Source of the DNA: Octopus sinensis
Lineage: Eukaryota
Direction: 5' to 3'
Length of the DNA: 64,000 nucleotides
Assembly: GCF_006345805.1 (NCBI RefSeq)
Contig: NC_043000.1
Coordinates: 109,988,001-110,052,000 of the forward strand
Part shown: positions 22,201 through 52,979 of the stretch, in pieces
Layout of the letters: each line of letters starts with the position of its first letter
Position numbering within the stretch: the stretch's first letter is position 1
Notes under the pieces: generated by a model
Told to the model about the DNA's origin: nothing
The model's database searches: none
Seen by the model: the letters and a program-made list of their open reading frames with translations, nothing else
Translations under genes and position numbers: made by a program

Positions 22201-22885
22201 TCCATGACAAAATTGCAGACTACAGCAGACACGGGATCACAAGATTGCAAATTTCACAATTTGCAGAGTAAACACAGCGATATCGCTTGGCACATTGCTT
22301 CATGAAGGTTCACTGCTAGCTCTCACTGCACGTGCAACCACATGCTGCCATTTGTTGGTGCACAACAGAACTAATCCAGGAACTTTTTGATACCACCTTG
22401 TGTGTGTGTGTGTATATATATATATGTATATATATATGTATGTATGTGTGTATATATATATGTATGTATGTATGTGTGTATATTATATATGTATGTATGT
22501 GTATATATATGTATGTATGTGTGTATATATATATGTATGTATGTGTGTATATATATATGTATGTGTGTGTATGTATGTATGTGTGTATATATATATATGT
22601 ATGTATGTGTGTATGTATGTATGTGTGTATATATATATGTATGTGTGTATATATATATATATGTATGTATGTGTGTATATATGTATGTATGTGTGTATAT
22701 ATGTATGTATGTGTGTGTGTATGTATGTATGTGTGTATATATATATATATGTATGTATGTATGTGTGTATATATATATATATATGTATGTATGTATGTGT
22801 GTATATATATATATATGTATGTATGTATGTGTGTATATATATATGTATGTATGTATGTGTGTATATATATATGTATGTATGTGTG

Positions 22886-22918
<33 letters not shown>

Positions 22919-23103
22919 GTGTGTATATATATATGTATGTATGTGTGTGTGTATATATATATGTATGTATGTGTGTGTGCATATATATATGTATGTATGT
23001 GTGTGTGCATATATATATATATGTGTATGTATGTGTGTGTGCATATATATGTGTATGTATGTGTGTGTATATATATATATGTGTGTATATATATATATGT
23101 GTG

Positions 23104-23134
<31 letters not shown>

Positions 23135-23349
23135 GTATATATATATATGTATGTATGTGTGTATGTATATATGTATGTATGTGTGTGTATGTATATATGT
23201 ATGTATGTGTGTGTATGTATATATATATGTGTGTGTATATATATATGTGTGTGTATGTATATATATATGTATGTGTGTATATATATATATGTATGTATGT
23301 ATGTATATATATGTATGTATGTATGTATATATATATGTATGTATGTATG

Positions 23350-23389
<40 letters not shown>

Positions 23390-23744
23390 TATGTATGTAT
23401 GTGTGTATATATATGCATGTATGTGTGTATATATATGCATGTATGTGTGTATATAGGAAGGGCATCCAGCCGTAGAAACATTGCCAGATCAAACTGGGCT
23501 TGGTGCAGCCTTCTGGCTTCCCAGACCCCAGTTGAACCGTCCAACCCATGCTAGCATGGAAAGCAGACGCTAAACGATGATGATGATGATGATGATGTGT
23601 GTGTATATATATATATATATATTATATATATGTATGTGTGTATATATATATGTGTGTATATATATATATATATGTATGTGTGTGTTGTATATATATATAT
23701 GTATGTGTGTATATATAATATATATATGTATGTGTGTGTGAGTG

Positions 23745-23790
<46 letters not shown>

Positions 23791-26700
23791 ATATATATGT
23801 ATTTGTGTGTGTGTGTGTGCATATATATATATAAATATATAAAAATGATCAAAATCATTGAAGTCAGTCCCCAAACATGGCTGCAGTCCAATGACTAAAA
23901 CCAGTAAATGAACAAAAGAGTGAGGTAAAGGGGTCAGATCCCAGATCCCATGGTGTCCCTGTAGTTGGTTTTTGTCCTACTTGAACTTGTGCAGGTTAAT
24001 GGTTAAGGAGGAGAAGAAAGTGTGGTCAGGGAAGAGGAAGTTTTAAAACATTGCTGTTCTGGATTTAGAAAATGAATTAGCTTAGAGACTGTTGAGCAAG
24101 TCATGGTTGGAGGGCTGGTAAGATGAGAAGAGATGCATCAAGTGCATTCGAGGAATGGCATTAAAATAATTGTTTTGTTCAGAGAAACAGAAGTAGTAGT
24201 GGTGGTGAGAGGAGAGCTGAAAAGAAACAGTTGAAGGTCTGTAGTGTGATGTCAAGAGTGGGGTTTGTTTATCAATGGGATGGCCATCATTGAATGTCAT
24301 TCAGACTGGTGATGGTGGCGAAAGTGGCAGGGTGTCACAGCTGCATCTTCCAAAATATGTGAACCAAGTGACCTTATGTTGTTCTGTCTCTAGGGACCAC
24401 TTTCAATAAGGGATTTTGTGAATCCTCATGATGAAAGAATGTTTCTAACTTGTTTTCTTTTCACCTGTTCATGTCTGTCTGTCTGTCACAGTGTTCCATT
24501 AATTTTGCCAGCTGTCACATGAGCTACGTTTACAAATTTAGATATTTGTCATTTGATAAAGCTTTTATAATGCTTGACACAGCTGCTGTTCCTTATTTAT
24601 ATAAGAAGATATCAATAGCAGAGAACATTATGGGATATTAGCTTTTGTCTTTGTGTAGTGATCCACTTCCTAACCACATTTCTGTTTGTCAGTTTGTCCG
24701 TTTCTCTAACGACGACGCAATAATGCCATGAATAGTCTTAATATCAGAGCTATTCTATTACCAGAATGAGATTATTTGGCCTGGCTGACTGGTCATCCAA
24801 CCTGTTTTACTGACAGTATGATTTTGCACTGAATGTACACACACACACACATTTGTTACTTTTGTGGTTGATGTTTTGTAGGGAAGAGTTGCAGTATCTT
24901 TATAAATCTATTCTGTACATGAATATGATAACCTCTGATGTGGCAATTGCATTAAGGTTATATTCTGAGGGTAGGGCGACCTTAATAGATCATTCCTCTA
25001 CATAAAAAAAGTCCATTTCTGTTTTATGCAAAATGAGAAGTAATCGTAATTTAACTTTATATCTGGTTGTTTTGTTTATTTTATCATTATTATTATTTAT
25101 TTATTTTAATATATATACCAATGCTGTTGATATATTTCTAAAGATCCAAGTGAAATAGACAAAATGGTTCTGGAACTTGATACAGACATTGAACATTTCA
25201 CCGTAAAAAGTCTTGTGAGTATCTTTCTCAAATTTATTAAGTTTATATCTACCCCCCCCCTCTACCTTACCTACCACATGTCTCACCTTCCTCAAATATT
25301 GTATCTGCATCTCTTTCTCTTCCTCATCCTCTTTTGCATACCACCCAACAGCATATCCTCTCCTTGTTTATTGTCTTATCATGCCCGTTCAGCTACCCTG
25401 CACTCTCAGACATCCTCTTCTCACCCTGTTCCATTATGTGACCTTATGTTGTTCTGTCCCTAGGGACCACTTTCAATAAGGAATTTTGTGAATCCTCATG
25501 ATGAAAGAATGTTTCTAACTTGTTTTCTTTTCACTTATTCATGTCTGTCTGTCTGTCACAGTGTTCCATTAATTTTGTACCCCTCTTGGCACCCTTGCTC
25601 CATTCATTCCTATTCACCTTATACCTTGAAGGGCCATCTAGACACCTCATCCCATTTCCTAATTTTATTGCTTTCCAGCTCCCCCCCCCCCAATCATTTC
25701 ATTCCTTGTCTGCTCCAGTCCTTTTCTCTCTACTTTTTGTTCTCCTAGCATAAAGCATCTCCTCCCCATTCAAGGTTCATAATTTTGCAAGCTGCATGGT
25801 TACCTCACTAGTGCTGGTGCCACATAACAAGCACCTAGTCCTGCTGTAAAGCAGTCGGTGTTAGGAAGGGCATTCAGCCGTAGAAATGATGTCAAAGCAG
25901 TGACTGGACCATGAATGCAGTCCTTGAGCCCATCAGATCCTGTCAAACTGTCCAATCTAGACCAGCGTGGATTATGGTGATGATTTACTCAATATCTTAA
26001 TCATGATCAAACAATACTGTATTTCCCTTTTTCAAAACTGAGTTATGTACATGTGTACTAAGTGTAGGTTTTAACCCTCACTGCGCTGATTAGGCTTGCT
26101 TCCCATCCCTCTGGTCCTGGATTCATTCCCACAGTGTGAAGCTCCTTGGGCGGGTGTCTTACACCTCAGCCCCAGGCTGACCAAAGCCATGTGAGCAGGC
26201 TTGGTTTTATAAGAAACTGGAAGATGCTTTGTCCTGTACGTGTGTGGGAATGTGAAAGTGTTTGTGTCCCCCTCGACGTTGCATGATTATTGTAAATCAA
26301 TATCATTCTTTTGCAACATTCTGCAAAAACATGTCTGGCCAAGGAGGGGAAATATTACCTTGCTTGAAAATGGGTGAAAGATGGTGACAGCAGGAGTGTC
26401 TGGCTGTAGGAAGTCTGCCTCAACAAACTCCATGTGACTCATGCAAGCATGGAAAAGTGGACATGAAAATAATGATAACAAGGACATAACATGCTAATGA
26501 TATGCAAATCCATTCTCACAATCTCTAGCCATTATTGGTCAGCAAAAATAAAATGTGTATTCTATGCCTTATAAAATGTGGAGGGGTACCCAACTATCAA
26601 AACTTAATTAACTTGGTTCCTGTGTCTCAAGTGTACATTCCGAGAATTGGGTGAACTCGGCTCTTGTGCAGAATGGGTTAAATGGATGGGATTGTATTTT

Positions 26701-29700
26701 TCCTCACTGAATATGTTATTGATTTGTTGGTGTCTTAATGTTGTTGTTGTTATTTATATCCAGAAAAATATTGAAAGTCAACTTGGCCTGCTGTTGCACA
26801 TGACATCTGAAGAAGACGCTTATGTTCTGAGCGAGAAGGTTTATAAAGATTTCAACAGTGGACAGTAAGTTGCAAAGTGTTTTATCTGTTTTCTGAGGTT
26901 TACTACCACCACCACCACCACCACCACCAATAATAACAATAATTCTTTCTCCTTTGGGGACAAGGGCTGAAATTTTGTGGGAGGGAGTTAGTTACATCAA
27001 ACCCAGTGCTTTATTGACCCTCAAAATGATGAAAGGCAAAATTAACCTTCACAGCATTTGAATTCCATAATGTAAAAGATTTTCTGCTGTTCATCTTCAG
27101 AGATAAGTCCTTGGTATGGTTGCAGGAACCGTTCATGAGTCCTTTGGAATTTGCCGTTTCAGCAATAATAGTTGTGATTTGGTATATTCAAATTGGGAAT
27201 TTGTGTGGAGTGGATATTTTCACTTGAACTGACCTTCAAAATATGGCTGATGTGGGGTGGAGGTTGTCATTAATTGATCCCCTCACCCATAATTGATGCT
27301 CATTTTATTGACTCTGGCAGTATTTTGAACTCTTGTGGATGGCAAGATACAAGTAAATCGTGTTTGGCAAGCAGCCTGTTGCTCGACATTTTCTGTTGAC
27401 TCTTTTGCTGCTCTAAATGGTGTAATGGACAGTTTGCCACTCCATTGTTTAACATTCTTTTGATCATGAGCGGCAACATTGATATCAAGCCTTGACATCA
27501 TTACATCCAGTCACTTGCTGCCACCGATTCTTTAGACCAAAGTGTAGAACTCATAATCTAATATTTAGTGTCCACATATAAGGAAGCGAAGACTTCCTGT
27601 CAGTTCCAAGTTGCTTTGTGTTTGGTTCTGCAGACAGCAAAAAAAAGCTCCAAATGCCTCTGCCAATCCATAGTGGTCATTCTGAACTGACTTTGGTGTT
27701 TCTAATGCTTTTTACCTTCAATGAGAATTTTTCTCCATAGCAAACCGCAGTGAAAATACATTTTTACAGGCCAAATGTGTTCTAAACATATTTGAACTCA
27801 AGTGTGAAATCTCGAAAAAAAATCTGCTCATCCAACATCTTTTTTTATTTCCACCAGTCACAAACTTTGACTAATAACAAAATGGCTATTTTTTTGTGCA
27901 TCTGTGTGGTTTTTGCAGTCTTGACATTAGAAGGTTGTCACAGGAGCCCAGCCAATCCCTTGCCAGGTGGCCTAGTATGAAAAGGGGCATTTCTGTCACA
28001 TTCACCTCTCTTACATCTCCCTGGTATCGTCACAGACCTGTTAACGCCCCCCCCCCCCATTATGTTAACTATTTCTGTTGTTTCTTCATTGTCAGAATTT
28101 TCTCGAATCCTCTGTAATCAGCCAATTTCCTTTGCTTTGATTCAGTAAAATATTTGCATCAAAATAAAGGCTTCTTTATTCTTCCATTAGAAGTGCTATT
28201 TTCTAAAGTACAATGTACTAAATTTACTCTAAAAATGTTTTAATATAATGAGTGAAAAAAACAATGAATGAACAATAAAATGTTACACTTTTTTTCTTTG
28301 TCTCTTAAACTAGTAAAGTATCTCTCGGGTAGGCATGAATGTCACAACATTACTTATCCATCACACTTTGTATAAAATCTCGGTGTTTGTTTGTCTGTCT
28401 TCAGCCTAAAGATAGAATTTTATGCTGTATCTGTCACCAAAGAAACCAAAGTCGTGAAGAAAGGAATCGATGTTCTTCGATGGTTGAAACCGAAATTGTC
28501 TTCACAAACCAACATTTTTGAATATTCCATTGTGGATCTCAACACTTTTGGTTTGCAGAGATTTCTTGTTACTACACACTAATTCTTCCATTTCTCTCTT
28601 CTTAATGTTCTCTTCTATTACTGTAAAACTTTCTTCAACTAAATTACTTGACCTGCTGCAATAACAACCAAATCTCTCTCAAATCATTCCCTTTCATCTC
28701 AGAAAAGGACATGCGAGATATTATAATCCTAGGTACTCCTATGTTTATGAAAATGCATAGCCTAGCAGCAGTTTCTGTGTTGCACCTACAATTGTGTAAT
28801 CATAGTTTTGTGTCAAGATAAAGGTAAATACATACACAGACCCGTCAGGCTTTTTTCAGTTTCCATCAGGGATATAATAGAAGACACTTGCCCAAGGGTA
28901 ACTGAAACCAAAGCAGCCTTCTGTTGTTAGATTTTCTGTAACTGTCAGGTTCTTATGTAATACAACTTGATGGTTAATATCCAGGCATAAGAATTGGTGT
29001 TGAGTGCATTGTAAGCTCTCTGTCCGCTGAGTGTGTGGCACATTTTCAAGTCCTATTTGTGGTCATTTCACATTACTTAACCCATGATAGGGAGACTTCA
29101 ACATGGCACAGAGAACCCTTGCTAAAAGACTAATTTTTAAGGGGCCCAACCAATGGAGTGGAATGGTAGCTGTCTGGGATTTTTTTCTTCCCTTGTTGAG
29201 CCTTAGACCTCATAAAGCCAGTTACCTGGTTTCTATGGTGCTAAGTGATCAAGATCACATTGCCCTTGAACGAGGTACCACTCCATTGCAAGATTCAATG
29301 GCCAGTAGTTTTGGTGTGAGGGGACAAATCAATTACATTGACTGACCCCACTCCAGTAGTTTATTTTATTGACCCTGAAAGGATGAAAGGCAACGTGGAC
29401 ATCAGAACATAAAGAACCAGAAGAAATGCCACCAAACATTCTCTTCTACAGGTTAATGATTCTGCCCATTTGCCAACTTTGAAAATAACAGAGAACAGAA
29501 TTCTCACACTTTTTCTTTTGTATTCCATGTTGTTGTCTGAGTGATTGATGAAAAGGGACGTCTCACTTGATTGATTCTGTTTTTATCTGTTGCAGTTTGT
29601 CAAAATAATTGTTCAGGTCATGGCAAATGTGACCAGTACACTAAACAATGTTTCTGCGAGGCCTTTTGGATGCAGAACTACATTCTCACAAAATTTTTTC

Positions 29701-29785
29701 ATGGTGAAAACAACTGTGGTAAGTAAAAAGGCTTCACTAATTATACACACTCACACCAATATATTATATATATATATAATATATA

Positions 29786-29822
<37 letters not shown>

Positions 29823-29829
29823 CATATCT

Positions 29830-29865
<36 letters not shown>

Positions 29866-29869
29866 CATC

Positions 29870-29901
<32 letters not shown>

Positions 29902-29919
29902 CATATATATATAATAATA

Positions 29920-29973
<54 letters not shown>

Positions 29974-30100
29974 TATATATTATATATATATACTATATAT
30001 ATATATATATATTATATATATTACATATATAATATAGATATATATATATAATATACATAATATATATAATATAATATATATAATATATACATTATATATA

Positions 30101-30149
<49 letters not shown>

Positions 30150-30550
30150 GATATATATATACAATATATATACAATATAATATATATATATACTATATAT
30201 ATATATATTAATATATATATACTATATATATATATAATATATATATATATACATATATAATATATACATATATATAATATATACATATATATATATATAC
30301 ATATATATACATATACATATTACATATATATATATACATATATATATATATACATAATATATATACATATATATATATATACATATATACATATACATAA
30401 TTAATAATATATATACATATATATATATATATATACATATATCTATATATATATTATTATATAATATATACATATATATATACATATATATATACATATA
30501 TATATACATATATATACATATATACATATATACCTACATATATATATAAC

Positions 30551-30583
<33 letters not shown>

Positions 30584-30587
30584 CATA

Positions 30588-30620
<33 letters not shown>

Positions 30621-30864
30621 CATATAATATATATATACATATATATATATATATCATATATATATATATATAATATATACATATATATACATATACATAT
30701 ATATACATATACATATATATACATATACATATATACATATATATATACATATATATATAATACATATATATATATACCTATATATATATATACATATATA
30801 TATATATACAATATATATATACATATATACATATATATACATATATACATATATATATAACATA

Positions 30865-30903
<39 letters not shown>

Positions 30904-30962
30904 TATATACATATATATATACATATATAATATATATATTACATATATACATATATACATAC

Positions 30963-31011
<49 letters not shown>

Positions 31012-31957
31012 CATATAATAATATATATACATATAATATATATATACATATATATTATATTAACATATATATAATATCTATACATATTATATATATATAA
31101 TATTATATATATACCTATATATATTATATATATATATACATATATACATATATATATATACAATATACATATATATATATACATATATACATATATTATT
31201 ATATATATATATACATATATACATATATACATATAACATATATATATCATATATATATATATATATACATATATACAATATACATATATACATATATATA
31301 ACATATATATATACATATATACATATATACATATATACATATATACATATATAACATCTATAATATATATATACTAAGCAAATAGGGTTCAGCAACGAAT
31401 TGCCTTACCACATACCGAATTTAGAAATAGCAGTCAAAGGGTATAGCTATTTCTTCTACTAAAAAGGGAGATCTCAGTAAAAACAGCAATTGGATACTGA
31501 GTTGAGTTGGTACCTCCTAGTATCTCAAAATTCAATATATAATCATTTATGATTATAGTATTCCACGCTGAAGAGAAAAGAAGTTTCGGTAAGATAGAAT
31601 TATTTAATATTTAATATTTTAATTCTTATGCTTTCCTAAAACTTGATTTCGAAACGTACGTCCGTGGATAACTTTAAAAATGTTTGATAGATTGCGGTTA
31701 ATTCATTCTCTCTTACCTGTTTGTGTCAGCCTTCCCATTGCTGTTTTTACTGAGATCTCCCTTTTTAGTAGAAGAAATAGCTATAACCCTTTGACTGCTA
31801 TTTCTAAATTGTATGTGGTAAGGCAACTCGTTGCTAAACCCTTATTGCTTAGTATTACTTAATTTTCCTCGAATGAGGCTTTAACATGCCGAGACTACTG
31901 GTGTAATTGATAATTTTTCCAAATTAATTAATTTCACCCTTCATTATTACGGATAAT

Positions 31958-31991
<34 letters not shown>

Positions 31992-32013
31992 TATATATAT
32001 ATATATATAATAT

Positions 32014-32054
<41 letters not shown>

Positions 32055-32160
32055 TATATATAATAGGATATATATATATATATATATATACAATATATAT
32101 AATATATATATATAGATATACACATATATAATATATATATATATTATATAATATATATAT

Positions 32161-32207
<47 letters not shown>

Positions 32208-32210
32208 TAT

Positions 32211-32242
<32 letters not shown>

Positions 32243-32395
32243 CACATATATATATATATATAATATTATATATATATATAAACACATATATATATATTAT
32301 ATATATACCATAGATATATATATAATATTATATATATATACACATATATATATATATATACACATATATATATATATATATACACATATATATAT

Positions 32396-32449
<54 letters not shown>

Positions 32450-32530
32450 TATATATCTATATATATATATATATAGATATATATATACACATATATATAT
32501 ATATAATAATATATAATATATAATATATAT

Positions 32531-32562
<32 letters not shown>

Positions 32563-32575
32563 CACATATATTCCA

Positions 32576-32607
<32 letters not shown>

Positions 32608-32665
32608 CACATATATATATATATAACATATATATATATATACACATATAATATATATACATTAC

Positions 32666-32696
<31 letters not shown>

Positions 32697-33095
32697 CACA
32701 TATATATATATATATTATATATATATATACACATATATATATATATATATACATATATATATACATATATATATATATACATATATATATATATTATATA
32801 TATACATACATATATATATATATATAACATATATATATATACATACATAATATATATATATATATTACACATATATATATATATATTATACACATATAAT
32901 ATATACATAACATATATATATATATAATATACATACATATACACATATATATATATTATATACATACATATACACATATACATACATTACATATATACAT
33001 ACATATATACATACATACATATATACCTACATACATATATAATATATATACATATATATATATACATATATTATATATATATTACATGTAATAAT

Positions 33096-33127
<32 letters not shown>

Positions 33128-33789
33128 CATATATACATATATACAATATACATATACATATATACATAATATAACATATATACATATACATATATAACAT
33201 ATATATATATACATATATACATATATATATATATACATATATACATATATACATCTACATATATACATATATATATATATACATATATACATATATATAT
33301 ATTATACATATATATATATAACATATATATATATATATACATATATTATATATACATATATAATATATATACATATATACATATATATATTATAACAATA
33401 TACATATATATATATCTATATATATACATATATATATATACATATATATATATACATATATATATATACATAATATATATATATATATAGACATATATAT
33501 ATATATATATACATATATACATATATATATATACATATAACATATATACATATATATATACATATATACATATATATATATACATATATACATATATAAT
33601 ATATATATATATACATATACATATATATATATACATATACATATATATATATATATTATACATATTATATATATATTGTGTCGAAGAGCGTAGGCTCAAG
33701 ACATAAAATACTTTCTCACTTCCCAAACGTTAAACTAAATCTGTTTTTTGTTTACACACCCATCTTTGTCTTTTGTTTTTCATAAATTC

Positions 33790-33825
<36 letters not shown>

Positions 33826-35872
33826 TAGATATATACAGTGAGAATTTATGAAAAAACAAAAGACAAAGATGGGTGTGTAAACAAAAAAACAAATTTAGTT
33901 TAACGCTTGGGGAGTGAGAAAGTATTTTATGTTTTGAGCCTACGCTCTTTGACAGAAAGGAAAACAAAAATAAACGGGGAGAGAAAATAGGTTTAGTGGC
34001 TAGCGGTCTATCATGGTGAATGCCGGACAGAGGGGTTACCCAGGAGAGCTAGGAAGAAGAAGAGATAATAAAATAGTGGTGATCCTAAAACGAAGGTGCT
34101 ATACATATAGTACGTTTCAAAAGTTGTACTAAAAGGAAGCACATATTACCAAAGGGTCTTTGTGCAGTAAATCAGTTCCACACTCTGTTCCTATGTTGAA
34201 TATGGTTAGACAAGTCTTCATAACTACCGAGAAACTATGAGGCAGTTGTTGAAGTCTATTAGTAATTTGTCAATTAAATGACCGTGTTTTGGGTGCTGTC
34301 TAGGATGTTAGTGTATACAATAGCACCAGTTCCATGCCATACCTGTAAGCAGTTCTTTAAATGGACCTTGTAAATGGCTTTCCTTGTCATGAAAAGAATT
34401 TAAATTTTTTTGATGCAATGTTGTTAATCTCATGACTATAGGCATCTCCAGGAGTGAGCTTTTCCTTACAGTTGCATTTTGTATAAACAGAAACAATTGT
34501 TTTTACAAAAGCTGTTGGTGCATGGAGTGAGGTGATTGGCAGCAGCTGTTTTGAAGTTGGTGATTTGTGTGTGGCTCACTGGAAATTCAGTCTGTTTTGG
34601 CAGCAGTACTGTTTGATGCTGGAGACGAACACTTGCACAGAAATATATACAGACAAACGGGGAGAAGACAGAGGGAGAGAGGCTGATAGGCATTACAATT
34701 TATCAATTGAGGATGATTGACCCAAACACTTGTTTCTCTCTCTTCATACGCATAGAGAGAAATATACACACATAAACAGAGAGAAAGAACAAAAGAAGCA
34801 TTAAAACATCTCCGGTCAAATAAGTCAGCACTGAATCAATGACTTCGTAACCCTTTGGTGCTGTTTCAGTCATTAGACTGCGACCATGCTGGGGCACTAC
34901 CTTGAAGAATTTTTAGTCAAACCAATTGACCCCACTACCTTTTTTTCTTATTTTTTAAGGCTGATCCTTATTCTATCAGTCTCTTTTGCCAAACAACTAG
35001 GTTACAGGGACATAAACACACCAACATTAGTTGTCAAATGATGTTGGGGGACACACTATATATATATATTCTGTATAGTGTGAAAGTATCCTAATGTGAT
35101 CTTTGTTGTCCTCTGGAAACCCTGATGAGTTTCCTTATAAGGTATTTAAATTGCAAAATTATATTTTTCTAAATATAACTAGAACCTCTGCATGGCCGTG
35201 TAACCTGCTGAAAATAGACCCCAAATCTCCCATCTTAAAAGGACACGGATAATGCAATCCAAGATGCATTATCTGCATTAAAGACTGCATGGCCATGTTT
35301 GGAATGTCCTTAATTGTAGTTCTAGGGAAAAGTAACTGACAATATCTCATGTTTTGTAATTTTAATCTTGAGAGATGAAACAATTGTTGATTAATTAATT
35401 TGCATCCATTGGATCTCTGTTTTCTCGCTTGATGAAAATGTCTGATATCCTACGATATTCTATATAATATATTCATTGAAGGATTATCTCTCCAAAATTT
35501 AATATATTAAACCAGTTTATCTTGGATAAATATTCATATAAGAGATTTAAATATCCCCATTGTGACCATATATATGTGTGTGTGTGTATATATAATGATA
35601 AATCTCAGAGCGAGTGATAGAGCACAGAAAGTATGTCTATAGCCAGCTGGAGGAGGTGTCCTCCTGGGGCTACAAACTACAGTAGCATCCACCCTTAGGG
35701 GTAAGCCATATTCAAATGGCAAATATACGTCACTATATATATATACATATATATATATGTATGTATGTATATAACGTATGTATAAATATGTATGTATATA
35801 TATATGTATGTATGTATATATATATGTATGTATGTATATATATATGTATGTATGTGTATATATATATGTATG

Positions 35873-35913
<41 letters not shown>

Positions 35914-38900
35914 GTGTATATATATATATATATATGTATGTATATGTATATGTATGTGTATATATGTATATATGTATGTGTATATATCTATATACGTATG
36001 TGTATATATATATATATGTATGTGTGTATATATATATGTATGTATGTGTATATATATATAGTAGGCCTATAGTAGAAGACATTTAGCCAAGGTGCCATGC
36101 AGTGGGACTGAAATCAGAACCATGTGGTTTGCAAGCAAACTTCTTACCACAGCAATGAGTTAATTTTCCCGTCATATATATAAGAATGACCTCCATCTTC
36201 CCTTTTGCTCCACAATTTTTCTCTTTTCTTTCTTCATCAACAGATTGGAGCATCCTGTATGTGGTCATTGTATGCTTCCTAATAGTCGTCGGCCTCGCTG
36301 GCTTTGTCTGGTTGACTTGCTGTATATGGAAAAGACGTCTATGGCGGTGGAGAACCAGAAAACGGCCCAAATATTCTTTACTTTCACAAAATGATAATGT
36401 CAAAGAAAATTTTAAAATGTTAACTAAAAGTAGGCAAAGTTTTTTCTTTTCTTTCTTTTCTTTGAAGAAACTAAAATAATTTCTCTTTTAATGTACTTTG
36501 TTTCTTTATTTATATAATTTAGTTTGAATTGTTTTAAGCTTTTTCTATCACATATAAATTGCTGGTTAGACACACAGTGTTTCATTTTGCAACCCTAATA
36601 TGCTACCAAGTATATTAAGGGTTTATAAGTTGATGCTGTGTCCTGTTAGCAGGGCAATTCAATCTCTTTTAAGTTATCTCTACAGATTTCCTATTGCAAG
36701 TTACAACAGTTTGTGGCACTGAAGAAAGAACAATAACTTCTGAAATGTGCATATACACCTTTGATTGCATTGTTTACATTAGATATATTCATATATAAAA
36801 CGTTCTAGCTTCTGAATTTTTATGGAAAATCTGTAGAGATAACTTAAAAGTGAGTTAGATACATTTTAGAGGTGTCCTGACAAGTGTTATGCTCTGAGAT
36901 GTGTGTTAAAACCAAAACAATTGCACCATGGAGGACACATATTAACCATTCAAAAATATACAAAAAAAACTTAATTTCACTTAAGCATTTGTTATTTTGA
37001 TGTCAAAGTTTCCCTCTCCCAACAGTGGACCTGGTTTGAGGCAACGCTTTTGATTAGTATATATTGTGGGCTTCAGGGTTATAAATATAATTGTTTTTTA
37101 TATTGGTCAGTTGTTCTGGTTGTCGTCACCTGATGCTTGTAGTTGGTCAGTTAACTTGGTATTTTGTTGTAATTTACATTCCCTCTTTTCTTTCTATCAG
37201 TGGCGGTGGGGAGATGGGGCCTTTCTTATTGTATAGTACAGTCAGTGCTACAGGGTGGGTCAGAGGATGCCCCTGTGCCAGTGACACGTAAAAAGAACCC
37301 TCTAGCTGGCTCCTGTGCACTATCCCAACGTGATCGATGCCAGGCCCGCCCGACTGGCTCCTGTGCCAGTAGCACATAAAAAGCACTCACTACACTCTCA
37401 GAGTGGTTGGCATTCGGAAGGCCATCCAGCTGTAGAAACTCTGCCAGATCAGATTGGAGCCCGGTGCAGCTACAGTCTCTCCAGACTGTCAAACTGTCCA
37501 ACCCATGCCAGCATGGAAAACGGATGTTAAACGATGATGATGATTTGTACTCCCTAATGTTTTGCGAGTGTATATCTTTGAACATATTAGATTACATTAT
37601 TTTAGAGAATTGGGTCCTCTTTTGTTTATTATAGAAATGCCAAAAGACATTGGGAAATATAATGTCTGTATTCAGTTTAAGATGACCAATATTTGAATAG
37701 TACCACTATTTCGAGAGAACAGCAGAACATGGTGATGCAGGCAACCAGATCTGTGACTGTTATATTTATTATAACTGATTGAAAGTTCAATGTTTTGTCC
37801 CCATCAAGGGCAAAGCTGAAGACCTCCACTGCAGCATCCTCTGTCTGTCTTTGTCACCACTGGACTTATGAAGTTGGTCGTCAACAACTTAATATTAAAA
37901 TCCTTTTATTACTATTCCATGAAATAATCACAAATTGACATGGAACCTGAGATTTATAACTAGAACCTCTGCATGGCCGTGTAACCTGCTGAAAATAGAC
38001 CCCAAATCTCCCATCTTAAAAGGACACGGATAATGCAATCCAAGATGCATTATCTGCATTAAAGACTGCATGGCCATGTTTGGAATGTCCTTAATTGTAG
38101 TTCTAGGGAAAAGTAACTGACAATATCTCATGTTCATGCTTATACATGTGAACATAAACGAATGTGGTTCACTAATGAGAACTGAAACTAATTAACAGAT
38201 TTGTTCACTGCTAATTTAGTACTTTTTAAATTTTTAGTCACTTAGTTAAGGGTGAAGTGCAGTGCTCACCACGACCTCCTCATCCAGGGCCATCAAACAT
38301 TGTTAGCAGATTTATGCAAATCAGAAACTTGGCCAAATTCTTACCTCAGAATAGACTCCAGTCACCTAAGATAGTGCTGTTAAACAAGGGAACCAATTAA
38401 ATCTAGCACCCAAATAAGCCAGGGTATAATTCGAACCTGAATGCCAAAACCACAACAAAAGGCGTTCCTTGTGAGGCCTGTCTGTTGCCTTATTTCATTT
38501 ATTGAAAGTGAAAGCAATGAAAGGTAAATTCAACCTTGATGACATTTGAATTCAGAATGCTAAGTAGCAAAATAAATACTACAAGACATTTTATTCAATG
38601 TTCTAATTTACTTAAGTCTTTTGTTGAGGACTGATGCTCCATCAGCCATCAACAAACTGTTTTCCATTGATAACATGCAAGACTAAAAAACCCGCCTCAA
38701 CTGAGAGGGGAGAGTGTGATAGTATTGAGGGAGGTGGCTTTGTACCCACAATTGAGAGAGAAAGAAGTGTCTTGCTGTAAGGGAGATAAATGACTGCCCC
38801 AATTGGAAAAAAGAGAGAGGGAGATGGTGGTGACGATGCATCAGGACATACCCTTAAATTAGAGGGAGGTGAACATAATTGACACAGATGATTCAACAGG

Positions 38901-40656: not shown

Positions 40657-40850
40657 AAGGCGGTGAGCTGGCAGAATGCTTAGTATTTTGTCTGTCTTTA
40701 CGCTCTGAGTTCAAATTCCGCCGAGGTCAACTTTGCCTTTCATCCTTTCAAGGTCGATAAATTAAATACCAGTTGCATACTGGGGTCAATATAACCGACT
40801 GGCCCCCTCCCCAAAAATTTCAGGCCTTTCCCTAGAGTAGAAAAGAATAT
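40657..40850 (+). mobile_element. Second tRNA-headed SINE family (family C)
   Basis: AAGGCGGTGAGCTGGCAGAA..GAGTTCAAATTCCGCCGAGGTCAACTTTGCCTTTCATCC..AGGCCT..AGTAGAAAAG. Related copies at about 7150-7280(+), 16480-16620(+), 26950-27080(-), 29320-29460(-), 51590-51715(-), 52155-53070(-, interrupted), 61060-61275(-). Confidence 0.8.
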
Positions 40851-45100: not shown

Positions 45101-47286
45101 CTCAACATTAGGATATGGCCTGGGAGCTTAAAAAGCCAAGAGGAATTCAGAGCTGAATAAGCAGAACAAACAAGTACACGATGTCTAATGGAGTCTCTAG
45201 CAAACTTACAAGTTAGTGGAACTTAAAATACTCAAAATATAGCAGGAAAATCTTGAAACAAGACCCATCGACTGTTCTGTTGACCTGCCTCAAGTTGTAA
45301 ATAAGACCTTGTTACAGAGTTGACATAACCCTTTCATTACCAACCTGGCTGAACCAGTTCTGGCTCTGTAGTACAAACGTCTTGTTTTCATAAGTTTTGA
45401 ATTGAAATCTTCCACCAAACCTTAGTCAAAATTTATGTTCCTAACACTAGCTGAATGATAACTGTTATATTTAAAGTAATTGAAAGAAACACAGAGCATC
45501 TCAAAATAAATACAATAATGAAATGGTTAAGGTACATGCAGTGGGGCTATATTTCATATTTACATTTTTTTATCACATTATCTGAATTACATTCTATAAT
45601 GTACCTGTTAGTACTTTTGGGTTGGTGTAATTTGTAATTCTGATATTCTGCATTTTTTTAAATATAATAAAATAGAAATGAAATAATGTTCAGTTCAAAA
45701 TATTACCATTTCATTTCAAGGTTGTGTGTTACAGAAATTTCAACAACTACAAACAATTTTGACTATAAATAGCCATCTATGTTTCATACTAAATGTATAT
45801 ACACCATTGACAGGCCAGCTACTGAGTTATTTGTCCTGAGATAACATCTTTTTTATCTGTGTTAAAAACACAATAAATATCAGAGGGAGACAAAAATTTG
45901 TTGCAGCAGCCAGTAAGAGTGCCAGTTGCAGTTTGGCTCCTTTCAATGATGCAAACTCACAGATAATTCCTTTCCTCTGATATAGAAACATGTGAATAAA
46001 TCATTTGCTAATGTTGTAAATAGCTGCCTGACTCAATAGAAATCCAATTTACATAACTGATGCAGTGTTAGATTAAAGTAGCCATCTCTGTATCACACGT
46101 AGATGGCGATACACAAAGGTTGTTGATTAGCAAGTGACTTGTGGTATTTTATTCTGAAATAACATCTCTCTTTGGCTTTTCTGTGTTTTGTAATACAATC
46201 CCAAAATAGCTGACCTGGAGAGTCAAGATTAATTCATAGATTTATAGAAATAATTCTCAAGAGGCAACCAACATGGTTCTGGGTGTTGGTGCCACAAAAA
46301 TAGGTAAAATGGAACCATGCCAAAGCAGACACTGGAGCACAAAGCAGTCCTTAAATCCATCAGATCCCACCAAGCTGTCCAAGACTTGTCAACATGGAAC
46401 ATGGATGTTTAACAATGATGATGTGAGCGAGTGTCTCTGAGCTTCAAAACAATGCTAAGGATGAGGTATGACCTACTGACTCTATAGCTACCAGTCTGAT
46501 GCCATACCAACTTGGCCAAATGGGAACCAGCATTAGAAAATCAACGGGAAATAACTACTGGCTTGTAATGGGGTGGGGTGGGGGGATGTTATTCATCTGG
46601 CTTTTATAGCTTCAAGGGGAACATGTCAAACTGAAGATTATTTAATGATGATTAATTTAATTTAATTACCTTCGCTGTTTGGAAACTAATCCGCATGACA
46701 CGTAGTCGGCCTCTAGCTTCAGCTGCTCTACAAGAGAAAACGGTAAAAGAACAACGTCAGGTAAACGGAACAAGAAATTTCATAGTTTCTTCTTTCTTTT
46801 GCCCAGGTAAAAAGGCTGTGCCTTTGGCCCTTTGCAGGGCCTCTGACACTGCGTATCTGTGTGTGTCTTTGTGTTTACATCACCATCGCTACTTGAGAGC
46901 TGGTGATGGTTTGTTTACATCCTCGTAACTTAGCAGTTCAGCAAAAGGGTTTGATAGAATAAGTACTGGACTTTAAGACATAAGAACTGGGATCAATTTG
47001 TTTGACTAAACCCTTTGAGGAAGTCCTTTAGCACGGCTGCAGTCCAATGACTGAAACCAGTAAACATGATCTTAGAAAGATTTAAAGCCAATGCCACAAC
47101 TGACCAAACACTTCTCCACTACACTGTGAAGAAATAACAGAAAGGTCAAGAGTCTCAGAGTAAATGCAAAAGTCGTTTCAGGTGTACCTCCATCTTTTAC
47201 TTACCTGCAGAACGTATTTAGAGTTGGAAAAACACAACCAGCATGGAAAATGGCTGAGTGGATAGGGTATTGAGTGAACAGATAAT

Positions 47287-47487
47287 ACAGTTCTATATTT
47301 AAGAGATGAGGAATTATGTACAGTCGACGGATATTTGTCCATATCTTGTTTGCTGTTAACACAATGTTTCGGCTGATATACCCTCCAGCCTTCTTCAGGT
47401 GTCTAGGGGAAATTTTGAACCTGGGTTCTCATTCCTAGGGTATTTTTTGATATTTATTATTATTATTATTGTTCAGGTCACTGCCTG
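47287..47487 (-). mobile_element. Single-arm copy of the 52244 element
   Basis: Reverse complement matches 52510-52730, including the 3' terminus; hammerhead-like core at 47358-47403. Confidence 0.8.
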
Positions 47488-48120
47488 AAATATCCATCGA
47501 ATGTAAATAATTGAGTTAACAGGTTATGGTTTAAGAGTTCAAACCCACTGCAGGCATTTCATTGGGTCTAAGTTTATCTAACGGTTGCTAACAAGTGGAA
47601 ATATGAAACCTCAAGCTGATGGAGATTTGTCTCTCATCTGGTTAACCAAAGTTGGACACCATCCATTAAAATCCCTTTTGACCGAGACCTCTGGCATTAT
47701 GGCGTGCTTGAGAGGAAGACCCATGAAACCAAGTAAAAGCAGTCGTGGCAGACACTGGTGTCATGTAAAAGCACCCATTCCACTCACAGAGTGGTTGGCA
47801 ATAGGAAGAGCATCCAGCTGTAGAAACCCTGCCAAATCAGACTGGAGTCTGGTGCAGCTTGCCAGTGCTGGTCAAACCGTCCAACCCATGCCAGCATGGA
47901 CAACAGACATTAAATGATGATGATCTGAGCTAAATAGACTTTTTCACTGAATAAGAGCAAAGCTTTACATTCATCATCTGTAGGAATAGACACCATATTG
48001 TATGGCGACATGCTGTGCTTGAGGAGACCTGTTGAGTCAAGCACATCAAAATCAAATGGAAATTGTAGTTGTGATTCCCATGCCGGTGGCACATAGAAGG
48101 CACCATCCGAATATGGCCGA

Positions 48121-51700: not shown

Positions 51701-52243
51701 CAACATTATTACTACCAAAAAGCAAAAATGATAATAATGGTTTCAGATTTGGGCACAAAACCAGCAATTTCAGGGGAAGCGATAAAGCATGTGCTCTACA
51801 TCTCACTCTCAGCCAAGAGGTCCTTGTCTTGTGGGCTGGTGTCACATAAAAAAAGGCACCTGTGCCAGTGCCACATTCTGTAAAGTGGTTGGGAATGGCA
51901 TCCAGCTATAGAAACCATGCTAAAAGAAACAACTGGAGCCTGGTGTGGTTCTCCAGCCTTGCCAGCTCCTGTCAAACTCTCCAATTCATGCAAGCAGAGC
52001 AAATGGACATTGAATGAAGAAGATGAATAATTCTTTCTAATCATAGAAATTTGGAATCGTTCATCTAGGATCTGTTGTATTGACTGTGGAAAAATGAAAA
52101 GCAAAGTTGACATCAGCAGAACTTGAACTCAGGACAGAAATATAACAATAATAATCCTTTCTACTATAGGCACAAGGCCTGAAATTTGTGGGAGGGGACA
52201 AGTCGATTTCATTGACCCCAGTGCATACCAGGTACTTAATTTA

Positions 52244-52732
52244 CATTTGACGGATATTTATCCTCGTTTGTTGTTAGTACATTGTTTCAGCTGATATACC
52301 CTCCAGCCTTCATCAGGTGTCTTGGGGAAATTTCTAACCTAGGTTCTCATTCCTAAGGAATTTTTCCATCTTATTATTATTATTATTATTCAGGTCACTG
52401 CCTTGAATCGAACTCGGAATCTTGGGGTTACCAGCCACTATGCCATATGCACGTAGGCATATGGTATATTGCAGGCTACTAACCCCAAGATTCCGAGTTT
52501 GATTCCAGGCAGTGACCTGAATAATAATAATAATAATAATAATAACAACAACAACAACAACATCGAAAAATACCTTAGGAATGAGAACCCAGGTTCGAAA
52601 TTTCCCCAAGACACCTGATGAAGGCTGAAGGGTAAATCAACCGAAACGTGTTATCAACAACCAAGATGAGGACGAATATCTGTCAAATGTAAATAATGTA
52701 CGTAATTCTTCATCTCTTAAACATAGAACTGT
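52244..52732. mobile_element. Head-to-head palindromic element: tRNA-like head, (AAT)n and hammerhead-like core on each arm, with a 13-bp flanking duplication
   Basis: Centre CCATATGC-acgtag-GCATATGG (52443-52464); arms about 200 bp; GGTACTTAATTTA at both 52231-52243 and 52733-52745; inserted in a family C SINE. Confidence 0.8.
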
Positions 52733-52792
52733 GGTACTTAATTTATCGACCCCAAAAAGATTAAAGGCAAAGTTGACCTCAGCAAGATTTAA

Positions 52793-52979
52793 CCCTTTTG
52801 TCACCGTATTTATTTTGAGATGCTCTGCGTTTCTTTCAATTAATTTTAAGTGTAACAAAGCATTTAGTAAAATAACTTAGTTTAAGGTTTGGTGGAAGAT
52901 TTTAATTCAAACCTTATGAAAACAAGTCATTTGTACTACAGAGTCAGAGGCAGTTTCAGCTGGGTTGGTATCAAAAGGG
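52793..52979. mobile_element. piggyBac-type MITE (second family), nested in a SINE
   Basis: TTAA-CCCTTTTG...CAAAAGGG-TTAA; a diverged copy in the opposite orientation lies at 45329-45526. Confidence 0.78.

What the first reader, a model, noticed from the sequence alone, without database searches (positions are those of the whole stretch)
31562..31668. Intact type I hammerhead ribozyme on the sense strand of the intron preceding the transmembrane exon
Seen: stem I TCCACG(31562-67)/CGTGGA(31663-68); core C3-U-G-A-A-G-A9 (31568-74); stem II closed by GAAA/TTTC and continuing as a ~75-nt hairpin (AAGTTT/AAACTT, AGAATTA/TAATTCT); G12-A-A-A (31651-54); stem III within the palindrome ACGTACGT; cleavage triplet GUC (C17 = 31662). 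Every conserved catalytic position is present. Established: a 2-bp helix III with a palindromic tetraloop (here GUAC) is typical of minimal hammerheads of Penelope-like elements, retrozymes and newt satellite 2, which cleave best as dimers. Inference: the motif is transcribed as part of the host pre-mRNA between the last ectodomain exon and the TM exon. It could cut the intron co-transcriptionally or mark an unannotated ribozyme-bearing mobile family.
Basis: partly seen in the sequence, partly recalled or inferred. Interest (0 to 1): 0.88.

Follow-up and report, generated by a model that had tools for sequence, protein, structure and literature searches.

The report
Lone hammerhead ribozyme motif in intron
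A complete hammerhead self-cleaving RNA motif is present at these coordinates, in the middle of a transposon-like inverted-repeat insert inside an intron, and it is most likely a stray copy of the ribozyme-carrying mobile elements common in invertebrates, not a new kind of regulator.

Summary
31562-31668 (+) has helix I of 6 bp, CUGAAGA, helix II of 4 bp (G10.1-C11.1) extended by a 68-nt AU-rich hairpin, GAA, the 8-nt palindrome ACGUACGU as helix III, and C17 at 31662. Rfam Hammerhead_1 (RF00163) aligns end to end on exactly these coordinates, but at 21.6 bits, below its 34-bit cutoff, and only when the search is narrowed. My descriptor scan found no hit in 400 shuffled windows. The 6/4/2+tetraloop layout is the canonical metazoan type I, matching the published mussel retrozyme ribozyme, not the minimal Penelope-type. 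The motif is on the sense strand of intron 29719-36243 of a KIAA0319-like gene, between the Cys-rich exon and the TM exon. It lies at the centre of a 485-bp non-coding insert with 124-bp inverted arms, inside a 3.9-kb (AT)n tract. No second copy, tandem unit or relative was found in the window or in any collection I could search. Best reading: a solitary, probably old copy of a hammerhead-bearing non-autonomous element, a passenger in the pre-mRNA with at most modest self-cleavage. Cleavage, family copy number and conservation are untested. It is a new member of a known kind, of modest interest.

The parts
31562..31567 (+). Hammerhead helix I, 5' strand (UCCACG)
   Evidence: Pairs 6/6 Watson-Crick with 31663-31668. 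Aligned to RF00163 helix I.
31568..31574 (+). Catalytic core C3-U4-G5-A6-A7-G8-A9 (CUGAAGA)
   Evidence: Read directly from the sequence. Aligned to the RF00163 core.
31575..31650 (+). Helix II: 4 bp (GAAA 31575-78 with UUUC 31647-50, G10.1-C11.1), then a 2x2 A.A/G.G internal loop and a 68-nt AU-rich hairpin extension (31579-31646) in place of loop 2
   Evidence: Minimum-energy fold and descriptor scan. RF00163 shows a 72-nt insert where the model has 10.
31651..31653 (+). Core G12-A13-A14
31654..31661 (+). Helix III: the 8-nt palindrome ACGUACGU. As a monomer it gives A15.1-U16.1 and C15.2-G16.2 closed by GUAC. As a dimer it gives an 8-bp intermolecular helix.
   Evidence: The RNAcofold homodimer forms the double hammerhead. 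The mussel ribozyme has the same layout, ACGCGCGU.
31662..31662 (+). C17. The predicted self-cleavage site is between 31662 and 31663 (GUC|C).
   Evidence: Position follows from the core alignment. Cleavage itself was not tested.
31663..31668 (+). Hammerhead helix I, 3' strand (CGUGGA)
31371..31494 (.). Left inverted arm of the host element
   Evidence: Complementary to 31733-31855 with 5 mismatches and 2 short indels.
31495..31561 (.). Left spacer (67 nt) between the arm and the ribozyme. It is not complementary to the right spacer.
   Evidence: Alignment score is within the shuffle range.
31669..31732 (.). Right spacer (64 nt)
31733..31855 (.). Right inverted arm
   Evidence: In the 496-nt RNA fold the arms form a duplex of about 124 bp and the hammerhead hairpin is kept (z = -22).
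31856..31945 (.). 90-nt unique, non-repeat tail on the right side only, before the (AT)n tract resumes
29759..33676 (.). Degenerate (AT)n tract into which the element is inserted
   Evidence: Tandem Repeats Finder reports one period-2 array of 3.9 kb. GC is 0.12-0.15.
29596..29718 (+). Upstream exon: the Cys-rich last ectodomain exon of the KIAA0319-like gene
   Evidence: ORF and splice signals. 47% identity across the exon junction to the cricket KIAA0319-like protein P0016.
29719..36243 (+). Host intron (6,525 nt, GT..AG) carrying the element on the sense strand
36244..36398 (+). Transmembrane exon (the 3' end is approximate)

Best explanation
31562-31668 (+) encodes a canonical metazoan type I hammerhead ribozyme motif.

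Shown:
- All core positions are present, with helices of 6 bp, 4 bp, and 2 bp plus a palindromic GUAC loop.
- A 68-nt hairpin replaces loop 2.
- The motif sits at the exact centre of a 485-bp non-coding insert (575 bp with its one-sided tail). The insert has 124-bp inverted arms and lies in a 3.9-kb (AT)n tract of a 6.5-kb intron of a KIAA0319-like gene, on the sense strand.

Inferred origin:
- The insert is a solitary, fairly old copy of a hammerhead-bearing non-autonomous element of the retrozyme / Penelope-like lineage. The arms differ by about 6%.
- That lineage inserts preferentially into (TA)n and often leaves an inverted 5'-truncated partner copy.

Inferred mechanism:
- The motif is transcribed as part of the pre-mRNA.
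- The hammerhead hairpin can fold before the right arm is made, and it is retained in the predicted fold of the whole element.
- It may cleave after C31662, either slowly as a monomer or through a two-transcript double hammerhead paired by ACGUACGU.
- There is only one site, so no unit-length or circular RNA can be released.
- The 124-bp arm duplex would keep the two halves together.
- The cut would lie in an intron. I therefore expect a passenger with little or no effect on the host gene.
For: Motif:
- Sequence.
- Descriptor hit with 0 of 400 shuffled windows.
- RF00163 full-length alignment on the same coordinates, 21.6 bits, E = 0.0028.
- The hammerhead-constrained fold is within 1.1 kcal/mol of the minimum, and the double hammerhead is the minimum-energy homodimer.

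Kind:
- Same 6/4/8-nt-palindrome layout as the tested mussel (Mg353) and coral retrozyme ribozymes.
- Matches the description of canonical metazoan type I in PMC4209133.
- GC is 33%, within the low-GC range given for animal retrozymes (PMC7229834).
- The element RNA is highly self-paired.

Insertion context:
- Inverted arms and a one-sided tail, inside an (AT)n tract.
- PMC8557442 describes pseudo-LTRs that may be inverted, an inverted 5'-truncated copy next to the unit, a tail at one end, and a (TA)n target bias for Penelope-like elements.
- A second, Penelope-style minimal hammerhead-like repeat family is in the same window, so such elements do live in this genome.

Host gene and strand.
Against: - The Rfam score is below the curated cutoff, and the hit was missed by the two wider scans.
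- The 107-nt hairpin is not more stable than shuffles (z = -1.3).
- There is no tandem repeat and no second copy in the window, so the defining retrozyme arrangement is absent.
- No Penelope-type ORF was seen in the window.
- 124-bp terminal inverted repeats with TA-rich flanks fit a DNA-transposon MITE equally well.
- Arm mismatches show no G.U bias on the + strand, so there is no sign of RNA-level selection on the arms.
- Helix II starts with one G-C and three A-U pairs. I could not identify loop 1-loop 2 contacts, so activity at cellular Mg2+ may be poor.
- The ribozyme is centred to within 3 nt in the unique core. The 'longer copy plus truncated inverted copy' model does not predict that symmetry.
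- There is no cleavage, expression or comparative data.
Confidence: 0.6

Rival explanations
1. The element is a MITE-like DNA transposon or foldback element with 124-bp terminal inverted repeats and TA target sites. It happens to carry a hammerhead in its internal region, and it moves as DNA, not through an RNA intermediate.
For: - Long, 94%-matching terminal inverted repeats run right up to the boundary with the flanking repeat.
- The flanks are TA-rich, as for TA-targeting Tc1/mariner-type MITEs (my knowledge).
- The symmetric layout of arm, spacer, hairpin, spacer, arm (67 and 64 nt spacers) suits a TIR element.
- There is no tandem arrangement and no retroelement ORF nearby.
Against: - Target-site duplications cannot be read in an (AT)n background.
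- The 90-nt unique tail on one side only is not expected for a clean TIR insertion.
- No transposase and no second copy are in the window.
- The paper search returned seven papers holding both 'hammerhead ribozyme' and 'miniature inverted-repeat'. Judged from titles and abstract openings alone, none appeared to describe a hammerhead-bearing MITE.
- Every known eukaryotic hammerhead family is tied to retroelements or satellites.
Confidence: 0.15
2. The motif is a domesticated intronic ribozyme that regulates the KIAA0319-like pre-mRNA, for example by competing with splicing of the TM exon. This would be analogous to the conserved intronic hammerheads (HH9/HH10) or the CPEB3 ribozyme of vertebrates.
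For: - Sense orientation, 1.8 kb into the intron that precedes the TM exon.
- The core is intact although the arms have diverged by about 6%.
- Conserved intronic ribozymes are documented in vertebrates (PMC7761336).
Against: - It is embedded in a transposon-like inverted repeat inside a 3.9-kb microsatellite, the signature of a neutral insertion.
- At about 3% divergence per arm, survival of roughly 35 critical positions by chance is about 0.3 (my arithmetic), so intactness is not evidence of selection.
- In the only related genome locus I could fetch, nothing beyond an exon aligned (76% nt), and the orthologous intron could not be retrieved.
Confidence: 0.06
3. The motif is a chance look-alike. 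An AU-rich local hairpin in a palindromic repeat happens to carry CUGANGA and GAAA...UH at its junction, with no ribozyme ancestry.
For: - The score is below the Rfam cutoff.
- The whole-window E-value against all families would be about 1.4 (my rescaling).
- The hairpin is not more stable than shuffles.
- The region supplies complementarity for free (the two ribozyme halves align with z of about 4).
Against: - 0 of 400 shuffled windows give even the relaxed descriptor.
- With both stems granted, the core plus the 8-nt palindrome has a probability of about 5e-9 from local composition (my arithmetic).
- The match extends to non-required details shared with tested animal ribozymes: 6-bp helix I, 4-bp helix II, G10.1-C11.1, a CGAAACG..CGUC consensus and a GUC triplet.
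Confidence: 0.06
4. The element is a live solo retrozyme unit that still yields processed or circular RNA. It would use a second cleavage site supplied in trans or by a copy outside the window.
For: - Canonical retrozyme-type ribozyme, low GC and a highly self-paired RNA.
- Solo monomers of retrozyme families are described (10.64898/2026.07.22.740005).
Against: - Two flanking ribozymes are required to release a unit, and only one is present in 64 kb.
- At 485-575 bp the unit is larger than the 150-450 bp reported for animals.
- A near-perfect 124-bp duplex is unlike the imperfect rods drawn for retrozymes (my reading).
- Retrozymes are reported to be depleted from introns.
Confidence: 0.05

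Closest known systems
Type I hammerhead of the Mytilus galloprovincialis non-LTR retrozyme (construct Mg353; Cervera and de la Pena 2020, PMC7229834)
   Same: - Same layout: 6-bp helix I, CUGANGA, 4-bp helix II starting G10.1-C11.1, GAAA, an 8-nt palindromic helix III (ACGCGCGU there, ACGUACGU here), and C17.
- Both lie in low-GC, non-coding DNA. The mussel is a mollusc. For the window, the best named match to the PKD exons is the mollusc Lottia, but the source species is not identified.
   Different: - The mussel ribozyme has a closed 5-nt loop 2, where this one has a 68-nt hairpin extension.
- The mussel units are 350-390-bp head-to-tail tandem repeats expressed as circular RNA. This one is a single copy flanked by inverted arms.
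- There is no sequence similarity outside the core.
Rfam RF00163 Hammerhead_1 (Schistosoma Sm-alpha, newt satellite 2 and other animal type I hammerheads)
   Same: Full-length alignment to the model, including the consensus CGAAACGcgCGUC and the type I topology.
   Different: The score is 21.6 bits against a 34-bit cutoff because of the 72-nt insert in helix II. The motif would not be annotated by a standard Rfam scan.
Minimal hammerheads in pseudo-LTRs of Penelope-like elements (Cervera and de la Pena 2014, PMC4209133; Craig et al. 2021, PMC8557442)
   Same: - The insertion context is similar: inverted terminal repeats, a one-sided tail, a (TA)n target, dispersed non-coding copies, and a palindromic helix III that allows dimers.
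   Different: - Penelope-type motifs usually lack helix III, have a bulged base between A9 and 10.1, a helix II of 6-8 bp and a helix I of 4-5 bp. This motif has none of these features.
- No RT/GIY-YIG ORF is nearby.
- The other repeat family in this window (47358-47403, minus strand) does have the Penelope-style layout.
[quoted passage not shown]
   Same: A solitary type I hammerhead on the sense strand of an intron of a protein-coding gene.
   Different: Those are defined by deep orthologous conservation. Here conservation could not be tested, and the motif sits in a transposon-like insert within a microsatellite.

Membership tests
Hammerhead ribozyme, type I (Rfam RF00163) | Conserved core C3-U4-G5-A6-N7-G8-A9, G12-A13-A14, and an H17 cleavage nucleotide | tested here: met
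   CUGAAGA 31568-74, GAA 31651-53, C17 at 31662.
Hammerhead ribozyme, type I (Rfam RF00163) | Three helices around the core with helix I open-ended, plus G10.1-C11.1 and A15.1-U16.1 | tested here: met
   Helix I 6 bp, helix II 4 bp plus extension, helix III 2 bp plus GUAC.
Hammerhead ribozyme, type I (Rfam RF00163) | Score at or above the curated gathering cutoff (34 bits) | tested here: not met
   21.6 bits. No hit in the whole-window gathering scan or the 651-nt scan. The shortfall coincides with a 72-nt insert in helix II.
Hammerhead ribozyme, type I (Rfam RF00163) | Loop 1-loop 2 tertiary contacts that give fast cleavage at low Mg2+ | tested here: inconclusive
   The 6-bp/4-bp spacing that positions the loops is present, but loop 2 is replaced by a 2x2 internal loop and a long hairpin. 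I could not check the conserved loop nucleotides.
Hammerhead ribozyme, type I (Rfam RF00163) | Mg2+-dependent self-cleavage giving 2',3'-cyclic phosphate and 5'-OH ends | not testable with these tools
   This needs in vitro transcription or end-specific RNA sequencing.
Animal non-LTR retrozyme | Head-to-tail tandem repeats (at least 2 units of about 150-450 bp), each with a type I hammerhead | tested here: not met
   No direct repeat in 31365-31945. No second copy of the element or of either ribozyme half in 64 kb.
Animal non-LTR retrozyme | Canonical (not minimal) type I hammerhead, low GC, non-coding, highly self-paired RNA | tested here: met
   Layout as in the mussel and coral ribozymes. 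GC 33%. Fold z = -22. Only short spurious ORFs.
Animal non-LTR retrozyme | Expression as unit-length linear and circular RNA | not testable with these tools
   No transcriptome data were available.
Penelope-like element pseudo-LTR hammerhead | Minimal motif: little or no helix III, a bulged base after A9, helix II of 6-8 bp, helix I of 4-5 bp | tested here: not met
   The focal motif is 6/4/2+4 with no bulge, against the description in PMC4209133.
Penelope-like element pseudo-LTR hammerhead | Physical association with a Penelope-type ORF (RT plus GIY-YIG) | tested here: inconclusive
   None was seen among ORFs of at least 70 aa. Pfam found only a Gypsy-type pol and an RVT_1 fragment. Degraded ORFs were not searched systematically, and solo pseudo-LTRs are common.
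Penelope-like element pseudo-LTR hammerhead | Direct or inverted terminal repeats, a one-sided tail, and insertion into (TA)n | tested here: met
   against PMC8557442. This is a resemblance and is not specific to the family.
MITE / TIR DNA transposon | Terminal inverted repeats | tested here: met
   124-bp arms, about 94% matching.
MITE / TIR DNA transposon | Target-site duplication and multiple dispersed copies with the same ends | tested here: inconclusive
   The flanks are (AT)n, so a TA duplication cannot be read. There is one copy in the window. The genome was not available.
Conserved intronic hammerhead (HH9/HH10 type) | Orthologous conservation of the motif in the same intron across species | not testable with these tools
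   Related-species loci L007 and L008 align only over one exon. The intron of interest could not be fetched.

The most novel reading that the evidence does not exclude
The element represents an undescribed class of TIR-bounded (DNA-transposon or foldback) mobile element that carries a canonical hammerhead in the loop of a 124-bp hairpin. Self-cleavage in the loop would convert a long hairpin transcript into a two-stranded dsRNA with free ends. That could feed small-RNA or RNA-editing pathways, or mark a new way for ribozymes to spread by DNA transposition.
Probability: 0.1. Interest if true: 0.6.

Novelty: new member of a known kind. Interest (0 to 1): 0.3.

Why it matters
Type I hammerheads are already known in very large numbers in invertebrate genomes, so one more copy changes little. 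Three things are mildly useful:
- A standard Rfam scan misses a structurally complete hammerhead because of a long helix II insert, so such variants are probably under-counted.
- The motif sits dead centre in an inverted-repeat element. If that proves to be a family trait, it would link hammerheads to a transposon architecture not yet described.
- It offers a natural test of what a sense-strand ribozyme does inside a long intron.

None of this bears on a long-standing open question unless the family or conservation data turn out to be unusual.

Tried and rejected
- **Rfam at curated thresholds over the whole window:** nothing. At E<=10 over 651 nt the hammerhead was again not listed. It appeared only in a 131-nt search.
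- **Own covariance model R1**, built from four published, tested animal hammerheads (coral, mussel, two axolotl). It did not find the focal site in the window with filters off. On the site itself it aligned only the GAAACGUACGU half. A 44-position model probably cannot span the 72-nt insert, so this test is uninformative, not negative.
- **Relatives through spurious ORFs.** The 60-aa ORF across the right arm had no candidate in the 5.8-billion-protein collection.
- **Relatives through DNA patterns.**
  - The metagenome scan for the two ribozyme halves gave 0 hits.
  - The metagenome scan for a 19-mer of the arm gave 5 hits with no similarity beyond the 19-mer, so they are chance.
  - The IMG/VR scan gave one hit, which I judged chance: the gap leaves only 5 nt for helix II.
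- **Orthologous locus.**
  - The PKD exons led to two contigs of ENA assembly ERZ26273219 (L007, L008), but only one exon aligns at 76%. No hammerhead descriptor hit occurs in any fetched locus.
  - A search with the Cys-rich, TM and tail exons returned a cricket protein and short Logan contigs only, so the intron of interest in a relative could not be reached.
- **Similarity to the mussel and coral retrozyme bodies:** none beyond short chance words.
- **Assembly foldback artefact:** rejected, because the 238-nt centre is not palindromic.
- **Whole-element ancient palindrome:** rejected for the same reason.
- **tRNA-like parts (ARAGORN):** none.
- **Source species:** not identified. For the PKD exons the closest named protein is Lottia gigantea (52%), and the best unnamed hits reach 81% over one exon. 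For the C-terminal exons the only named hit is the cricket KIAA0319-like protein (47%). 'Cephalopod or other mollusc' is my guess from repeat content only.
Full report
**Observation.**
- TCCACG (31562-67) and CGTGGA (31663-68) form a 6-bp helix I.
- CTGAAGA (31568-74) is the C3-A9 core.
- GAAA (31575-78) pairs with TTTC (31647-50) as a 4-bp helix II that starts with G10.1-C11.1. It is followed by a 2x2 A.A/G.G internal loop and a 68-nt AU-rich hairpin (AAGTTT/AAACTT, AGAATTA/TAATTCT).
- GAA (31651-53) is G12-A14.
- ACGTACGT (31654-61) is helix III, and C17 is 31662.

The 107-nt RNA forms helices I and II in its minimum-energy fold (-19.9 kcal/mol). A fold constrained to the full hammerhead costs only 1.1 kcal/mol more. 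The hairpin is not more stable than composition-matched shuffles (z = -1.3).

**Is it more than chance?**
- I wrote a type I descriptor: helix I of at least 4 bp, CUGANGA, an optional bulge, helix II of at least 4 bp with G10.1-C11.1, GAAA, A15.1...U16.1, H17. It hits two places in the window, this one and 47358-47403 (-). It hits nothing in 400 dinucleotide-preserving shuffles of the 64 kb on both strands.
- Rfam at curated thresholds finds nothing in the window. An E<=10 scan of 651 nt also did not list the motif.
- When the search is narrowed to 131 nt, RF00163 Hammerhead_1 aligns over its whole length (1-45 of 45) to exactly 31562-31668 (+). The score is 21.6 bits and E = 0.0028. The consensus CGAAACGcgCGUC lies opposite CGAAACGUACGUC, and there is a 72-nt insert where the model has 10.
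- That is below the 34-bit gathering score. Rescaled by me to the whole window, it would be E of about 1.4 against all 4,227 families, or about 3e-4 for RF00163 alone.
- The surrounding DNA is self-complementary, so I also asked what the core costs if both stems are taken as given. From the local composition, CUGANGA, GAAA, an 8-nt palindrome ending in U, and H17 have a joint probability of about 5e-9 (my arithmetic).

I conclude that the motif is real in the sense of descent from a hammerhead. It is not a look-alike.

**What kind of hammerhead.**
- Cervera and de la Pena (PMC4209133) describe canonical metazoan type I motifs as helix I of 6 bp, helix II of 4 bp, and helix III of 1-2 bp capped by a small palindromic loop.
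- They describe the minimal Penelope-type motifs as lacking helix III, with a bulged base after A9, a helix II of 7-8 bp and a helix I of 4-5 bp.
- The focal motif is the canonical kind.
- The supplement of PMC7229834 prints tested ribozymes. Mussel Mg353 reads GCGTCA CTGATGA GTCT-TTTGT-AGAC GAAACGCGCGT C TGGCGT. Coral Amil224 has the same plan.
- The mussel ribozyme has the same 8-nt palindromic helix III layout and cleaves as a monomer at about 0.1 per min. The coral one reaches about 0.8 per min. An axolotl motif with 2 bp plus a tetraloop reaches 22% in an hour and improves as a dimer.
- For the focal RNA, RNAcofold predicts the classical double hammerhead with an 8-bp intermolecular helix III as the best homodimer (-52.2 against 2 x -19.9 kcal/mol).
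- Both modes are therefore open.
- The unusual feature is the 68-nt extension in place of loop 2, together with an AU-rich base of helix II. Whether loop-loop contacts survive is unknown.

**Context.**
- The host gene runs on the + strand. Exons at 13.2 kb and 18.4 kb hit the Pfam K319L-like PKD domain.
- 29596-29718 encodes the Cys-rich segment [12 protein letters not shown]...GENNC, and 36244 onward encodes [10 protein letters not shown]... plus the basic stop-transfer stretch.
- Joined at GT (29719) and AG (36243), the product aligns without a gap at the junction to a cricket 'Dyslexia-associated protein KIAA0319-like protein' (47% identity).
- The ribozyme therefore lies on the sense strand, 1.8 kb into a 6,525-nt intron, directly before the TM exon, as claimed.
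- Most of that intron is one degenerate (AT)n array, 29759-33676.

**The element.**
- The ribozyme is the centre of a discrete insert in that array.
- Arms 31371-31494 and 31733-31855 are inverted repeats that differ by 5 substitutions and 2 short indels.
- Between the arms lie a 67-nt spacer, the 107-nt ribozyme and a 64-nt spacer. The spacers are not complementary to each other.
- A 90-nt unique tail (31856-31945) follows on the right only.
- As RNA, the arms form a duplex of about 124 bp, and the hammerhead hairpin persists as one branch of the central domain (z = -22).
- Arm mismatches are not biased toward G.U on the + strand. The arms therefore look like a DNA-level inverted duplication, not a selected RNA rod.
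- There are no direct repeats, no tandem unit, and no second copy of the element or of either ribozyme half within 64 kb.

**Interpretation.**
- Eukaryotic hammerheads are known from animal non-LTR retrozymes, from Penelope-like pseudo-LTRs, and from SINE-like or satellite repeats such as Schistosoma Sm-alpha and newt satellite 2 (my knowledge).
- A recent preprint argues that animal retrozymes derive from Penelope-like elements and describes solo monomers (10.64898/2026.07.22.740005).
- Craig et al. (PMC8557442) describe the following for Penelope-like insertions: pseudo-LTRs that may be inverted, an inverted 5'-truncated copy abutting the unit, a short tail at one end only, and a target bias for (TA)n.
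- The focal insert has inverted arms, a one-sided tail and an (AT)n target. Its ribozyme is of the retrozyme (canonical) kind.
- My best reading (0.6) is a solitary, fairly old copy of a hammerhead-bearing non-autonomous retroelement of this lineage, riding in the intron as a passenger.
- The mechanism is inferred.
  - The ribozyme hairpin can fold before the right arm is transcribed.
  - It may cut after C31662 slowly in cis, or through two transcripts paired at ACGUACGU.
  - One site cannot release a unit or a circle.
  - The arm duplex would hold the halves together.
  - A cut inside an intron is expected to matter little.

**Rivals.**
- A TIR-type MITE that carries a hammerhead (0.15) fits the long terminal repeats, the TA-rich flanks and the striking symmetry. 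I cannot exclude it, because target-site duplications are unreadable in (AT)n and no other copies were available. It would be new: I know of no hammerhead-bearing MITE, and the one literature search, judged from titles and abstract openings only, did not turn one up.
- A domesticated regulatory intronic ribozyme (0.06) is possible only in principle. Intactness is not evidence of selection at this divergence, and the setting is that of a neutral insertion.
- Chance (0.06) and a live solo retrozyme (0.05) are disfavoured by the tests above.

**What could not be done.**
- No eukaryotic genome collection was searchable by DNA.
- Attempts through spurious ORFs, DNA patterns in metagenomes and viral contigs and an orthologous locus in a related assembly gave nothing usable.
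- A covariance model built from four published animal hammerheads did not report the full 107-nt motif, most likely because a 44-position model cannot span the 72-nt insert, and was uninformative.
- The source species is not identified.

**Verdict.**
It is a genuine, intact-looking type I hammerhead on the sense strand of that intron. It is of the canonical kind, not the minimal kind, and neither cleavage nor family membership has been shown.
- Novelty: a new member of a known kind.
- Interest: 0.3.

Noticed in passing
window 47287-47491 (-), 52232-52510 (-), 52502-52732 (+): A second, unrelated repeat family (about 230 bp, three copies at 76-78% identity) carries a Penelope-style minimal hammerhead-like core. 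Copy A reads GACAC CUGAAGA A GGCUGG..UCAGCC GAAAC AUU GUGUU. It passes my descriptor, with a 5-bp helix I, a bulge after A9, a 6-bp helix II and no helix III. Copies B and C are damaged at the GAAAC-GU-H junction, which looks like CpG decay or an indel. B (-) and C (+) lie head to head about 300 bp apart, and A lies 4.9 kb away in the same orientation as B. This resembles pseudo-LTRs plus an inverted truncated copy, but I saw no RT/GIY-YIG ORF between them, and Rfam does not recognise the motif.
   Followed up: partly
window 53983-57219 (+): An uninterrupted 1,078-aa pol ORF of an LTR retrotransposon, with RVT_1, RNase H, an integrase zinc finger and an integrase core (Pfam). A possible gag-like ORF lies at 53581-53928. 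LTRs were not looked for.
   Followed up: partly
window 57971-58408 (+): A 145-aa reverse-transcriptase fragment (RVT_1, E = 2e-15) with a YADD motif. It looks like a non-LTR (LINE-type) remnant next to the LTR element.
   Followed up: no
window 22316-23900 and 35530-36090: Long compound TA/CA-type microsatellites (GC about 0.30 with strong GC skew at 22-24 kb). They produce long spurious ORFs of the form 'YIYTHTHIY' on both strands. The second tract ends only about 150 bp upstream of the TM exon's acceptor site.
   Followed up: no
window 52789-52982 vs 45326-45530 (-); 52732-52782 vs 61145-61195 and 40720-40771 (-): Further dispersed short repeats (78-90% identity) abut the second hammerhead-like family. 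Many ORF-like fragments across the window share motifs such as '[13 protein letters not shown]' and '[11 protein letters not shown]', which suggests an abundant SINE-like family.
   Followed up: no
window 31562-31668 (method note): The same RF00163 alignment at 21.6 bits was reported only when 131 nt were searched. It was not listed in the 651-nt E<=10 scan, although its E-value there would have been about 0.014 by my rescaling. The speed filters therefore probably dropped it, perhaps because of the 72-nt helix II insert. Hammerheads with long helix inserts are likely under-called in routine scans.
   Followed up: yes
L007 and L008 (ENA ERZ26273219, contigs of 1.07 and 8.59 Mb): A 'metagenome' assembly holds megabase-scale animal contigs that carry a KIAA0319-like PKD exon 76% identical in DNA to window 13249-13384. 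They appear to be two haplotigs of a related invertebrate.
   Followed up: partly
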